Part shown: in pieces, positions 1-10,052 of the stretch
How positions within the stretch are numbered: position 1 is the stretch's first letter
Layout of the letters: each line of letters starts with the position of its first letter
NCBI RefSeq assembly: GCF_006345805.1
Contig: NW_021827306.1
Location: 1-10,824 of the forward strand
Direction of reading: 5' to 3'
DNA from: Octopus sinensis
Taxonomy: Eukaryota
Length of the DNA stretch: 10,824 nucleotides
Made by a program: the position numbers and the translations under genes
Notes under the pieces: generated by a model
Seen by the model: the letters and a program-made list of their open reading frames with translations, nothing else
The model's database searches: none
Told to the model about the DNA's origin: nothing

Positions 1-122
1 TGGTCGATTTCATCGACCCCCCAGTGTTCCACTGGTACTTATTTTATCAACCCTGAAAGGATAAAGGACAAAACTGAACTTGGTGGATTTGAACTCAGAT
101 CAGAGAGATAAACGAAATACCG
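1..122 (-). mobile_element. tRNA-derived SINE family A, fragment (body and B-box; tail cut by window edge, head missing)
   Basis: Contains ggtacttattttatcaaccctgaaaggataaagg...tttgaactcaga...acgaaatac, which aligns with the other family A copies (176, 2228, 8645, 9150, 9758). Confidence 0.8.
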
Positions 123-136
123 AAAAGCTAGCTACT

Positions 137-3220: not shown

Positions 3221-3462
3221 TTCTAAATATTAGCATACATATATGAATTCGTGTATATATATATACACACGCATATACACATAAATACATTCACGTACAT
3301 ATATATACACACACATTTGCATATAATTTATATGTGTGTGTGTTCGTGTGTTTCTAAATATTAGCATATACGTATATGAATTTGTACATAAATACACAAG
3401 CATATACATAAAGATATATATACATATATAAATGCATTCACGTACATCTATATACACACACA
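3221..3462 (+). repeat. Older degenerate tandem duplication (~130 bp period)
   Basis: ttctaaatattagcata...atatgaatt...cattcacgtacat...tatacacacac occurs at 3221 and again at 3352. Confidence 0.8.
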
Positions 3463-3547
3463 CCATATATATATATATACATGTGTGTGTGTGTGTGTGT
3501 ATGTGTGTACGTATATATAAACGTACACATTTATATACACACACACC

Positions 3548-3598
<51 letters not shown>

Positions 3599-3659
3599 TA
3601 CGTATATATAAACGTACACATCGTATATATAAACGTACACATTTATATACACACACACC

Positions 3660-3691
<32 letters not shown>

Positions 3692-3759
3692 ATGTGTGTA
3701 CGTATATATAAACGTACACATCGTATATATAAACGTACACATTTATATACACACACACC

Positions 3760-3804
<45 letters not shown>

Positions 3805-3850
3805 TACGTATATATAAACGTACACATCGTATATATAAACGTACACATCG
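3441..3850. repeat. Composite minisatellite, about 4.5 units of 80-110 bp
   Basis: Unit: (tg)n-tatgtgtgtac-[gtatatataaacgtacacat]x1-2-ttatatacacacacacca-(ta)n, starting at 3481, 3561, 3671 and 3771. Confidence 0.95.
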
Positions 3851-4090
3851 ACACAAGAAGTCAACAATGGTAAGAACGATGCCAGAAGATGTAAGAACGG
3901 TGGTAAGATGGCTCCATATTGCACTGCCATTCAAATGGAAGATATTAAAGACGGTGTAAGACACGAAAATTCTTCTGTCAGAATTTGTTGCGAAAAGCAT
4001 TATGTTTAACATTATTTCTTGCGACATAACGAAACGTTTTGTCTCAGGCTTCGCGCTAATTGCCAAGAGTAATTCTTCAGAGTTCTACAG

Positions 4091-5329: not shown

Positions 5330-5612
5330 CAATGAACTCCCCCGTCGTTAAACAACGTATGAGGGTTCGACAATTTATTATCGAACAACCACACAGAAGA
5401 TGCTTCGTTTATAGTGATCAAATGTTTGTGTAGAGATAAGCTCACTCCCTCCATCAGATAGACATTACCTGTACAGGTGCAACTGGGTGCCTCACGTCAG
5501 ATGTCGAAATGAAGAGCTTTGTTCCAGAATACAGGTGTAACACCCAGTCTGGCAATCGAGCCCATGCTCTCGTAATCGTGAGTGCATCAACTTACCCACT
5601 AAGCCATGCGCC
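5330..5612 (-). mobile_element. tRNA-derived SINE family C
   Basis: Minus strand begins ggcgcatggcttagtgg with a perfect A-box TGGCNNAGTGG (5596-5606) and a degenerate B-box ggctcgattgc (5552-5562) 33 nt downstream, followed by a ~220 bp unique body. Confidence 0.72.
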
Positions 5613-5641
5613 TTGGCACACACACATGTATATATATATAT

Positions 5642-5875
5642 ATTAACAATTAAGGAACGGCCATAATAGGCCATTCACCCACTAGAAATAACAGCCAAAG
5701 CTTCTACCGCAAATAAAGATCAATTCCGTAAACAGGAGAAAATTAAAAAAACATTTACCCTGTAATTTTTTTAATTTTCTCCTGTTTACGGAATTGATCT
5801 TTATTTGCGGTAGAAGCTTTGGCTGTTATTTCTAGTGGGTGAATGGCCTATTATGGCCGTTCCTTAATTGTTAAT
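5642..5875. repeat. Perfect long inverted repeat (110 bp arms, 14 nt spacer)
   Basis: 5642-5751 is the exact reverse complement of 5766-5875, checked base by base. Spacer is catttaccctgtaa. Confidence 0.97.
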
Positions 5876-5969
5876 GTTGAACTTAAAAATGGTCTATGAC
5901 TATTTAATTTTTTCCCACTGGGCCGCTGGTGGCAATAAAATTCTACAAAATTTTCCTTGCCACCCTATA
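5876..5969. mobile_element. Possible right end of a foldback MITE or DNA transposon with a TIR-like terminus
   Basis: Minus strand reads TA-TAGGGTGGCAAGGAAAATTTTG, resembling Tc1/mariner-type ends at a TA. Internal inverted copy ggtggcaataaaatt at 5928. No matching left TIR is found. Confidence 0.4.
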
Positions 5970-5973
5970 TTGA

Positions 5974-6012
<39 letters not shown>

Positions 6013-6797: not shown

Positions 6798-6894
6798 ATG
6801 TGTGTGAATTATATATATATATATATACTTGTATATATATTGTATCTATATAAACACATGTACACACTCGCGTGTAGAAGTTATATATATATGT

Positions 6895-6936
<42 letters not shown>

Positions 6937-6963
6937 ATAATTATATATATATATATATATATA

Positions 6964-7036
<73 letters not shown>

Positions 7037-7129
7037 TAATATATATATATATAATAATATATATATATATATAATATATATATATAATATATAAATATAT
7101 AATATATATATATAATAAATATATATATA

Positions 7130-7160
<31 letters not shown>

Positions 7161-7206
7161 GCTGCGTATGTCACTATATATGTATATACATATATACATA
7201 TAAATA

Positions 7207-7262
<56 letters not shown>
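6798..7262. repeat. Long interrupted (AT)n microsatellite
   Basis: About 460 bp almost entirely A/T alternation; source of the poly-IY ORFs. Confidence 0.97.
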
Positions 7263-7266
<4 letters not shown>

Positions 7267-8644: not shown

Positions 8645-8869
8645 ATTTCTTTATTACCCACAAAGGGCTAAACATAGAGGGACAAACAAGGACAGACAAA
8701 GGGATTAAGTCGATTATTTCGACCCCAGTACGTAACTGGTACTTAATTTATCGACCCCGAAAGGATGAAAGGCAAAGTCGACTTCGGCGGAATTTGAACT
8801 CAGAATGTAACGGCAGACGAAATACAGCTATGCATTTCGCCCGGCGTGCTAACGTTTCTGCCAGCTCGC
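8645..8869 (-). mobile_element. tRNA-derived SINE family A, full length, tail type 3
   Basis: Head gcgagctggcagaaacgttagc, B-box gagttcaaattcc, body and tail ...tttagccctttgtgggtaataaagaaat on the minus strand. Confidence 0.92.
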
Positions 8870-9040
8870 ATACAAAGATGCCTATACAGATGCCTATGTA
8901 TATTATGCTAGCACACTTGATCGTCAACCTCCGTACGTAGCCGTCAAGACAGAGAGAAAGTGTGAAAACAAAGAGAGGGGCAGAAACTTTGCGGGAGAGT
9001 GACTGCTGAAAACATTACAATAAATCTAGGTAGGGCATTC

Positions 9041-9149
9041 AGTCGATCCCATCGACACCCAGGTACTTAATTCATCCACCTCGAAAGAATGAAAGGCAAA
9101 ATCGACCTCGGTGGTATTTGAACTCAGAATGTAGCGACGGGCGAAATAC
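9041..9149 (-). mobile_element. SINE family A headless second monomer in tandem with 9150-9382
   Basis: B-box and body present; A-box head absent; joined at gaaatac|ctatttc. Confidence 0.85.
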
Positions 9150-9382
9150 CTATTTCTTTACTACTCACAAGGGGCTAAACACAGACAGGACAAACAAGGA
9201 TAAACAAACGGATTAAGTCGATTATATCGAACCCAGGGCGTAACTGGTACTTATTTAATCAACCTCGAAAGAATGAAAGACAAAGTCGACCTCGGTGGTA
9301 TTTGAACTCAGAACGTAGCGACGGGCGAAATACCGCTAAGCATTTCGCCCGGCGTGCTAACGTTTCTGCTATCTCGCCGCCT
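9150..9382 (-). mobile_element. tRNA-derived SINE family A, full length, tail type 3
   Basis: Collinear with 8645-8869 over its full length. Confidence 0.92.
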
Positions 9383-9717
9383 ATCCTATGATATGTTATA
9401 ACATAATATACGACAAAATACCAGACATTGTTATTGCGGATCAGACAAGCTTTACAGAAATGACGATTTTGTGGTTGTTGCCGTTGTTATTCTTGTCCTC
9501 TCATTTAGTCTTCATATTCTTTCTTGCATTCACTCTTTCTTTTACTCCTTCATCCTTCAATTCGTTCTTCCTATCTTTCGTTTTTGTTTTTTGATCTGAT
9601 TTTTGATCTATACCGAATTCAGTTGGTTTTTTTTTTTGATTTTCGTTATTATTGCTACCCTAGTAAATTTTTGTTTTTTTGATAAGGTACTTATCATCAT
9701 CAACTTGATTACCATTA

Positions 9718-9757
<40 letters not shown>

Positions 9758-9976
9758 GGTGAGCTGGCAGAATCGTTAGCACGTTGGACGAAAAGCTTCA
9801 CGGCATTTCGTCCGTGGCTACGTTCTCAGTTCAAATTCCGGCCGAGATCGACTTTGCTTTTCACCCTTTCGGGGTCGATGAATTAAGTAACAGCTGAAAT
9901 ACTGGGGGTCGATGTAGTCGACTTAATACCCTCCCCACCCAAAAAATGGCTGCCCTTGTGGCAAAAATTTGAAACC
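9758..9976 (+). mobile_element. tRNA-derived SINE family A, full length, tail type 2
   Basis: A-box-like tggcagaatcg (9765-9775), B-box gttcaaattcc (9829-9839), body gtcgatgaattaagtaacag, tail ending gaaacc followed by (ATT)n; also preceded by (ATT)n. Confidence 0.92.
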
Positions 9977-10052
9977 ATTATTATTATTATTATTATTATC
10001 ATTATTATTATTATTATTACATTTTTCGCTCGATTTCATGTAAACCATCACC

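What the first reader, a model, noticed from the sequence alone, without database searches (positions are those of the whole stretch)
5642..5875. Perfect 110-bp-arm palindrome in an otherwise heavily decayed region
Seen: two 110 bp arms of complex sequence are 100% complementary around a 14 nt spacer, while neighbouring repeats are visibly diverged. Established: such structures extrude cruciforms and, if transcribed, give ~110 bp of dsRNA, a substrate for ADAR (coleoids edit RNA heavily) and Dicer. Inference: it is very recent, kept identical by intra-arm conversion, or selected as a hairpin RNA. A fold-back sequencing or assembly artefact is also possible.
Basis: partly seen in the sequence, partly recalled or inferred. 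Interest (0 to 1): 0.7.

Follow-up and report, generated by a model that had tools for sequence, protein, structure and literature searches.

The report
Young palindromic mini-transposon, probably ordinary
The perfect 234-base palindrome is real, but its ends carry the insertion signature of a small non-coding "cut-and-paste" transposon (a MITE), so it is most likely a very young piece of ordinary selfish DNA and not a special hairpin gene or an assembly error.

Summary
Arms 5642-5751 and 5766-5875 are 110 nt and 100% complementary around a 14-nt core. The flanks are not complementary. Other interspersed repeats in the window are only 66-93% identical.

The outer 5 nt of each arm are A+TTAA / TTAA+T. 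I read the unit as a 224-bp element (5647-5870) with two 105-bp inverted arms, bounded by a duplicated TTAA target at the edge of a (TA)7 tract. Its termini (TTAA|CAATTA...TAATTG|TTAA) fit the published piggyBac terminal motif, and such a boundary is expected by chance only about 1 time in 1,000. They do not fit Kolobok (RR...YY). A TA target (Tc1/mariner) is also compatible. TSDs of 5-10 bp (hAT, Mutator, P, Transib) are absent. A third, degenerate terminus next to another TTAA lies 100 bp to the right.

The element has no coding capacity, no sub-repeats and no Rfam match. Zero arm differences imply an age under about 4 My, if the octopus rate calibration applies.

Copy number, the decisive test, could not be run. 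The collections hold no host DNA, as shown with a repeat that has several diverged copies in this window as control.

Verdict: most likely a young palindromic MITE (about 0.6). Rivals are an in-situ template-switch duplication (about 0.2), an artefact (under 0.1) and a selected hairpin RNA (about 0.05). Interest is low.

The parts
5642..5751 (+). Left arm of the perfect palindrome as observed (110 nt): 1 chance-paired base, then TTAA, then the 105-nt left inverted repeat
   Evidence: (I1)
5752..5765 (+). 14-nt core CATTTACCCTGTAA. It contains an off-centre 4-bp stem TTAC/GTAA, a 3-nt loop and a 3-nt bulge.
5766..5875 (-). Right arm, the exact reverse complement of the left arm
5647..5870 (.). 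Proposed mobile element proper (224 bp). It reads CAATTAAGG...CCTTAATTG, has 105-nt terminal inverted repeats and contains no ORF of 20 aa or more.
5643..5646 (.). Left TTAA, the putative target-site duplication. The alternative is TA at 5644-5645.
5871..5874 (.). Right TTAA, the putative target-site duplication. The alternative is TA at 5872-5873.
5629..5643 (.). (TA)7.5 microsatellite directly abutting the left end. It is a TA/TTAA-rich target and a potentially fragile tract.
5875..5973 (.). 99-bp non-repeated block between the palindrome and the next TTAA. It is possibly the remnant of an older related element. It has no overall similarity to the arm.
5964..5977 (-). Third, degenerate terminus. 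The minus strand reads TTAA-T-CAATATAGG (7 of 9 matches to CAATTAAGG) and abuts (AT)16.
5977..6008 (.). (AT)16 microsatellite bounding the block on the right

Best explanation
The palindrome is a young insertion of a small non-autonomous DNA transposon: a foldback-type or palindromic MITE.

The element proper is 224 bp (5647-5870). It consists of two identical 105-nt terminal inverted repeats around a 14-nt core, with no coding capacity. It sits in a TTAA target at the right edge of a (TA)7 tract, and the TTAA is duplicated on both sides (5643-5646 and 5871-5874). TTAA is self-complementary and one further flanking base pairs by chance, so the visible palindrome is 110 + 14 + 110 nt.

Inferred mechanism: a transposase supplied in trans by an autonomous relative binds the two identical ends, cuts the element out and integrates it at TTAA. 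The boundary TTAA|C...G|TTAA makes a piggyBac-like relative the best guess. A TA-targeting Tc1/mariner type is not excluded.

The arms are perfect because the copy, and probably its family, is young: under about 4 My at 95% if the octopus rate applies. The family may itself have been born by fold-back copying of one transposon end.

I expect no locus-specific function. If a host transcript reads through it, the RNA would form a perfect duplex of about 110 bp. That would be an incidental ADAR or Dicer substrate.

Shown here: the structure, the boundaries, the motif fit, the lack of coding capacity and the lack of a longer TSD. Inferred: mobility, the transposase partner, the age and the neutrality.
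For: The perfect arms end exactly at TTAA on both sides, and complementarity is random beyond them.

A systematic TSD scan finds only TTAA, TA or a 3-bp TWA. No direct repeat of 5-10 bp flanks the element.

The first six bases after TTAA, CAATTA, fit the piggyBac superfamily terminal motif C[CAT][CAT][TGA][TAG][TGA], with the conserved first C and last G (paper PMC5381638).

TTAA plus that motif occurs at 3.2e-4 per position per strand in this window. A random arm end would carry it within 0-2 nt about 1 time in 1,000.

A third TTAA followed by a 7-of-9 match to the terminus lies 100 bp away, in inverted orientation, abutting a second TA tract. It is the only such site among the 92 TTAA sites (both strands) that are not palindrome termini.

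No ORF of 20 aa or more lies inside the element. It has no sub-repeats.

For size and context, an O. vulgaris repeat annotation reports recently active Tc1-Mariner (1,553 insertions), piggyBac (474) and 65 structurally called MITEs averaging about 196 bp (PMC13282606).

Palindromic MITEs made of two TIRs and a short core are known. One example is Made1, 37 + 6 + 37 bp (PMC1784062).
Against: No second copy could be examined, so mobility and family membership are unproven.

TTAA and TA are self-complementary. Any inverted duplication whose source ends in TTAA would show TTAA at both ends, so the 'TSD' is not independent evidence. Only its rarity at the boundary counts.

The 105-nt perfect TIRs are far longer than the 12-19 bp typical of piggyBac-like elements.

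I noticed the motif fit and the third terminus after looking, so they are post hoc.

The 30-mer of the arm and the translated arms found nothing in any collection. The controls show those collections contain no host DNA, so this is uninformative and not negative evidence.
Confidence: 0.6

Rival explanations
1. In-situ inverted duplication, not a mobile element. A replication template switch, or snap-back synthesis during repair of a break at the fragile (TA)n tract, copied 110 nt of adjacent sequence in reverse complement in one step. That would give a single-copy perfect hairpin. In one variant the source was the left end of an older 216-bp TTAA-flanked element (5647-5751 plus 5752-5765 plus 5876-5972), and the copy ran 5 nt past its terminus.
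For: One-step copying explains 100% identity without invoking youth of a whole family.

The structure sits exactly at the end of a (TA)7 tract.

The inner ends of the arms are A7/T7 runs, and the core contains a TTAC/GTAA stem that could nucleate fold-back.

Template switching is documented to create perfect hairpins in a single event (PMC10710096).

The third terminus at 5964-5977 together with the TA tracts on both sides fits an older element spanning 5647-5972.
Against: The copy would have to stop, by coincidence, within 5 nt of a TTAA|C boundary. That is about 1e-3 for a random end.

Priming from the TTAC/GTAA stem predicts ATG between GTAA and the T-run. ATG is absent, so a second 3-nt event is needed.

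The individual template-switch events quoted in the passages I read from that paper are 28 and up to 83 nt. Its classification criterion for new miRNA-like hairpins was a stem of 30-55 bases. The copy here is 110 nt.
Confidence: 0.22
2. Sequencing or assembly artefact: a fold-back chimera, or a hairpin contig end carried into the consensus.
For: Perfect palindromes are a known product of fold-back library artefacts and of some assemblers. No read-level data were available to me.
Against: Fold-back reads are palindromic out to the read end. Here the symmetry is only 110 nt, and both flanks are different, ordinary repeats.

The window has no N or gap.

From my own knowledge, the 14-nt core resembles no common adapter.

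An artefact would not generate a canonical TTAA|C...G|TTAA boundary.
Confidence: 0.07
3. A selected hairpin-RNA locus, such as an endo-siRNA/hpRNA gene, a young miRNA-like gene or a dedicated ADAR substrate. On this reading the arms are kept identical by selection or by intra-palindrome conversion.
For: If transcribed, the region gives an extremely stable duplex of 110 bp or more. Palindromic MITEs have given rise to miRNA genes elsewhere, for example Made1 to mir-548 (PMC1784062).
Against: No Rfam family reaches its gathering score.

The geometry is wrong for a pre-miRNA, which prefers a stem of about 35 bp.

The arms have no detectable protein-coding parent (a weak test).

I detected no coding gene anywhere in the window. 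I did not look for eukaryotic promoters.

Perfect arms carry no covariation signal. Youth explains the identity more simply.
Confidence: 0.05

Closest known systems
piggyBac-superfamily non-autonomous elements (TTAA-flanked MITEs, e.g. coral CMITEs, PMC2872659; C. elegans palindromic PALTTAA elements in Repbase, the latter from my own memory)
   Same: TTAA on both sides. The terminal C...G and the first six bases fit the superfamily motif. The element is small and non-coding. It occurs in a marine invertebrate context.
   Different: The arms are 105 nt and perfect, against typical TIRs of 12-19 bp or 13-14 bp in the roughly 100-bp CMITEs that start with CCC. No autonomous partner or second copy was seen.
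Made1 / hsa-mir-548 (palindromic mariner-derived MITE, PMC1784062)
   Same: The architecture is two TIRs plus a tiny core, so the whole element is a palindrome that would fold into a hairpin if transcribed. A TA target is also compatible here.
   Different: Made1 is 80 bp (37 + 6 + 37) and is present in many diverged copies. Here the element is 224 bp with perfect arms, and its copy number is unknown. The termini do not resemble Hsmar1.
Template-switch mutations that create perfect hairpins in one step (PMC10710096, PMC8794818, PMC5453318)
   Same: A reverse-complement copy lies next to its source, with perfect pairing and a short loop.
   Different: The reported events I read are 28 nt and up to 83 nt, against 110 nt here. 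The boundary here coincides with a transposon-type TTAA|C end, which that mechanism does not predict.
Drosophila hpRNA loci (endo-siRNA-producing long inverted repeats; PMC10292708, listed and not read)
   Same: A long inverted repeat that is capable of forming dsRNA.
   Different: From my own knowledge, hpRNA arms are homologous to target genes and the loci are shown to be transcribed and diced. Neither is shown here.
Foldback (FB) elements
   Same: Long inverted arms that make up nearly the whole element.
   Different: FB arms are built from tandem sub-repeats (my own knowledge). These arms contain none.

Membership tests
MITE (non-autonomous TIR DNA transposon) | Terminal inverted repeats at both ends | tested here: met
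   The termini are 105-110 nt and 100% complementary.
MITE (non-autonomous TIR DNA transposon) | Small size and no coding capacity | tested here: met
   The element is 224-234 bp, and no ORF of 20 aa or more lies inside it.
MITE (non-autonomous TIR DNA transposon) | Target-site duplication of fixed length flanking the TIRs | tested here: inconclusive
   TTAA, TA or a 3-bp TWA are possible. TTAA and TA are self-complementary, so they would be present in any palindrome whose source end carries them.
MITE (non-autonomous TIR DNA transposon) | Multiple copies at unrelated loci, or empty-site alleles | not testable with these tools
   There is no other copy in the window. The arm 30-mer found nothing and the translated arms found nothing. 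A multi-copy window repeat pattern also found nothing in the metagenome and viral collections, and translated flank ORFs found nothing in the protein database. So these collections hold no host DNA.
piggyBac superfamily derivative | TTAA target-site duplication | tested here: met
   TTAA lies at 5643-5646 and 5871-5874, directly flanking CAATT...AATTG. The caveat on self-complementarity applies.
piggyBac superfamily derivative | Terminal motif C[CAT][CAT][TGA][TAG][TGA] with conserved first C and last G | tested here: met
   CAATTA...TAATTG fits the motif from PMC5381638. The chance frequency of TTAA plus the motif is 3.2e-4 per position.
piggyBac superfamily derivative | Short TIRs (12-19 bp, mean 14), optionally with imperfect sub-terminal repeats | tested here: not met
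   The inverted arms are perfect over 105 nt. The paper reports sub-terminal inverted repeats up to 400 bp, but imperfect ones.
piggyBac superfamily derivative | Autonomous element with matching termini in the same genome | not testable with these tools
   No host genome is accessible.
Kolobok | TTAA TSD with termini 5'-RR...YY-3' | tested here: not met
   The termini are CA...TG. The definition is from PMC9587614.
Tc1/mariner-derived (Stowaway/Made1-like) MITE | TA target-site duplication | tested here: inconclusive
   TA at 5644-5645 and 5872-5873 would flank ACAATT...AATTGT. TA occurs at 0.13 per position in this window, so this is uninformative.
hAT / Mutator / P / Transib-type elements | Direct TSD of 5-10 bp | tested here: not met
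   No direct repeat of 5-10 bp flanks any symmetric or near-symmetric boundary.
Foldback (FB) elements | Arms composed of tandem sub-repeats | tested here: not met
   TRF finds nothing in the arms. No sub-repeats of 8 nt or more are present.
Template-switch / snap-back inverted duplication | One arm (the source) present in the ancestral or orthologous sequence, the other absent | not testable with these tools
   No ortholog or second haplotype is available.
Template-switch / snap-back inverted duplication | Junctions explained by microhomology priming | tested here: inconclusive
   The A7/T7 runs and the TTAC/GTAA stem could prime the copy, but the expected ATG after GTAA is missing.
miRNA / hairpin-RNA gene | Match to a curated RNA family, or pre-miRNA geometry (stem of about 35 bp, loop of 10 nt or more) | tested here: not met
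   The best Rfam hit is MIR6425 at 49.9 bits against a gathering score of 142. The stem is 110 bp or more and perfect, with a 3-nt loop. The geometry criterion is from PMC10710096.
miRNA / hairpin-RNA gene | Transcription and small-RNA production | not testable with these tools
   No expression data are available.

The most novel reading that the evidence does not exclude
The hairpin is single-copy. It was created in situ in one step by a 110-nt template switch or snap-back at a fragile (TA)n tract, which is longer than the 28-nt and up-to-83-nt events quoted in the template-switch paper I read. It is transcribed, which would give a coleoid a brand-new perfect dsRNA locus (endo-siRNA source or ADAR hyper-editing sink) caught at birth.
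Probability: 0.04. Interest if true: 0.6.

Novelty: new member of a known kind. Interest (0 to 1): 0.2.

Why it matters
If this is a young palindromic MITE, as I think, its value is limited. It marks recent or ongoing DNA-transposon activity (a TTAA-targeting type) in this genome. It gives a terminal sequence (TTAA-CAATTAAGGAACGG) with which the family and its autonomous partner can be found in minutes. It is also a potential site of local instability and, if it lies inside a transcript, of incidental dsRNA. It would become interesting only if it proved single-copy and expressed. In that case it would be a one-step birth of a long hairpin RNA.

Tried and rejected
1. Exact look-ups of the four ORFs that cross or flank the junctions (60, 62, 122 and 107 aa): none is on record.

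2. A 30-mer of the arm against the metagenome, viral and prokaryotic genome collections: 0 hits.

3. A composite of all stop-free translations of the palindrome against 5.8 billion proteins, to catch spurious ORFs on other copies or a coding parent: nothing.

4. Controls. The flank and repeat ORFs also found nothing. A degenerate 27-specified-base pattern of the repeat family that has at least five copies in this window found nothing in metagenome or viral contigs. The negatives in 1-3 therefore say nothing about copy number.

5. Rfam at a permissive E-value: only sub-threshold generic-hairpin hits over the palindrome. ARAGORN found no tRNA.

6. Is the 99-bp right block a diverged third arm? 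No. The global alignment is no better than shuffles.

7. Sub-repeats or IR-DR-type transposase sites inside the arm: none.

8. The supplement of the O. vulgaris repeat paper holds no TE library as text.

9. I considered spending the last protein search on a piggyBac transposase, to fish out host autonomous elements and read their termini. I did not run it. The output gives no organism filter and the chance of reaching the host's copies was low.

10. The phage, plasmid and E. coli collections and the bacterial promoter scan were not used, as they are irrelevant to this eukaryote-like window.

Full report
**Observation.**
The window really contains the palindrome. Arms 5642-5751 and 5766-5875 are 110 nt and 100% reverse-complementary around the 14 nt CATTTACCCTGTAA. 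Beyond the arms, complementarity is at the random level: 12 of 40 outward positions pair. The arms are complex and A-rich on the top strand (52 A of 110). They have no tandem structure and no internal direct or inverted sub-repeat of 8 nt or more.

As a single strand the region folds into one continuous hairpin. The energy is -193.8 kcal/mol as RNA (z = -32) and -133.7 kcal/mol as DNA (z = -35). The fold also shows that the spacer is not featureless. TTAC and GTAA inside it pair, which leaves a 3-nt bulge and a 3-nt loop.

The contrast with the neighbourhood is real. Every other repeat pair in the window aligns at 66-93% identity. The window has no N and no ORF that looks like a gene. It is dominated by microsatellites and short interspersed repeats.

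**Anatomy of the ends.**
The outermost bases of the palindrome read A-TTAA-CAATTAAGG on the left and CCTTAATTG-TTAA-T on the right. I scanned all symmetric and near-symmetric boundaries for direct repeats of 2-10 bp. Only TTAA (element 5647-5870, 224 bp), TA (5646-5871) or a 3-bp TTA/TAA are possible. No TSD of 5-10 bp exists. That excludes hAT-, Mutator-, P- and Transib-type insertions.

TTAA and TA are self-complementary. A duplicated target of that kind becomes part of the visible palindrome. Conversely, any inverted copy of a sequence ending in TTAA shows TTAA at both ends. The presence of a 'TSD' is therefore not independent evidence, so what counts is how rare such a boundary is.

A survey of 157 piggyBac-like elements gives the terminal motif C[C/A/T][C/A/T][T/G/A][T/A/G][T/G/A], with a strongly conserved first C and last G next to TTAA (PMC5381638). 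CAATTA...TAATTG fits it. In this window TTAA plus that motif occurs at 3.2e-4 per position per strand. A random arm end would therefore carry it within 0-2 nt about once in a thousand.

Kolobok elements also duplicate TTAA, but they have RR...YY termini (PMC9587614), and those are not met here. TA is too common (0.13 per position) to say anything for or against a Tc1/mariner origin.

**Surroundings.**
The left end abuts a (TA)7.5 tract (5629-5643). That tract follows a (CA)n-CATG leader and, further left, a minus-strand repeat with pol III box A/B-like motifs (my reading). To the right lie 99 bp of non-repeated sequence, then another TTAA (5974-5977), then (AT)16.

On the minus strand that third TTAA is followed, after one extra base, by CAATATAGG. 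This is a 7-of-9 match to the palindrome's terminus, in inverted orientation relative to the left end. Of the 94 TTAA sites in the window (both strands), only the two palindrome termini and this site have such a match. The background rate is 0.0014 per position. I estimate the chance of such a site within a few hundred bases at about 0.02. That estimate is post hoc.

The 99-bp block shows no overall similarity to the arm. Two readings are simplest. In the first, an older related element was already flanked by TTAA inside one TA tract, and the young palindrome landed in its left TTAA. In the second, the whole 326-bp block is a composite.

**What could not be done.**
The decisive test is copy number in the host genome, and it was out of reach.
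- Exact look-ups of junction-spanning ORFs found nothing.
- A 30-mer of the arm found nothing in the metagenome, viral or prokaryotic genome collections.
- The translated arms found nothing among 5.8 billion proteins.

I then ran controls. Translated flanking ORFs were equally absent from the protein database. A specific pattern of the repeat family that has at least five copies in this window was absent from the metagenome and viral contigs. So these collections simply do not contain the host's non-coding DNA, and the negative results are uninformative.

No tool confirmed the organism.

**Best explanation (about 0.6).**
I take this to be a young insertion of a palindromic, non-coding TIR transposon: a foldback-type MITE with 105-nt arms and a 14-nt core. 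It would be mobilised in trans and integrated at TTAA at the edge of a TA tract. piggyBac-like is the best-fitting superfamily signature.

Zero differences in 110 paired sites bound the arm-to-arm divergence at 2.7% (95%). With the calibration used for O. vulgaris repeats (JC 0.09 = 25 My, PMC13282606) this gives an age under about 3.8 My, with a median near 0.9 My. That paper also reports thousands of recently active TIR insertions (Tc1-Mariner 1,553, piggyBac 474). It reports 65 structurally called MITEs of about 196 bp on average, so such objects are already being annotated in octopus genomes.

Palindromic MITEs made of two TIRs and a tiny core are well known, for example Made1, 37 + 6 + 37 bp (PMC1784062).

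Against membership in piggyBac proper: TIRs there are 12-19 bp, not 105.

**Rivals.**
1. In-situ inverted duplication by template switching or snap-back repair at the TA tract (about 0.22).
   - For: it explains the perfection in one step, and it is a documented way to create hairpins (PMC10710096).
   - Against: it needs the copy to end by coincidence at a TTAA|C boundary. It predicts an ATG after GTAA that is not there. At 110 nt it exceeds the 28-nt and up-to-83-nt events quoted in the passages I read from that paper.
2. Artefact (about 0.07). Fold-back reads are symmetric out to their ends. Here the symmetry is 110 nt, the two flanks are distinct and there are no gaps. The boundary is also canonical for a transposon.
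3. A selected hairpin RNA, or identity maintained by conversion (about 0.05). No Rfam family reaches threshold. The geometry is wrong for a pre-miRNA. No parent gene was found. There is no evidence of transcription.

**Verdict.**
The exciting interpretations are unsupported. I class it as a new member of a known kind, of low interest. A single BLAST against the host genome would settle the matter.

Noticed in passing
window 5964-5977 (minus strand): A third TTAA is followed by CAATATAGG, a 7-of-9 match to the palindrome terminus CAATTAAGG, and directly abuts (AT)16. As a result the block 5647-5973 is bounded on both sides by TTAA plus a TA microsatellite. It may be an older related element, or a composite into whose TTAA the palindrome inserted.
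   Followed up: partly
window 5540-5617 (minus strand): The sequence left of the palindrome carries pol III box A-like (TGGCTTAGTGG) and box B-like (GGCTCGATTGCC) motifs, as in a tRNA-derived SINE head pointing away from the palindrome. ARAGORN and Rfam do not call a tRNA. The motif reading is my own.
   Followed up: partly
window 3-128, 216-381, 2277-2441, 8699-8869, 9029-9150, 9216-9378, 9761-9935: At least seven copies of one short interspersed repeat (core ...GGTACTTAATTTATCGACCCCGAAAGGATGAAAGG...GAATTTGAACTCAGAA...) at 73-93% identity. Several are joined to long (AAT)n/(ATT)n tracts. Larger blocks 132-525, 2184-2592 and 9708-10019 are related at 75-83%.
   Followed up: partly
window 3440-3855: A tandem array of about 3 units of 100 bp (82-96% identity). 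Each unit is a compound (CA)n(TA)n(TG)n microsatellite plus CGTATATATAAACGTACACAT. It produces many sub-threshold Rfam hits to microsatellite-like miRNA families (mir-297, mir-466, mir-3149), which I regard as spurious.
   Followed up: partly
window 6882-7266: A 385-bp imperfect (TA)n tract of about 196 units, with GC down to about 10%. It contains long imperfect self-complementary arms (86-103 nt, 80-87%). It is a potential AT-rich palindromic fragile site and far larger than the tract next to the finding.
   Followed up: no
window 5617-5643 and 3465-3491: An identical 27-nt compound microsatellite junction, CACACACACATG(TA)n, occurs in inverted orientation at two places. This suggests the (CA)n-CATG-(TA)n leader is part of a recurrent repeat unit and not independent slippage.
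   Followed up: no
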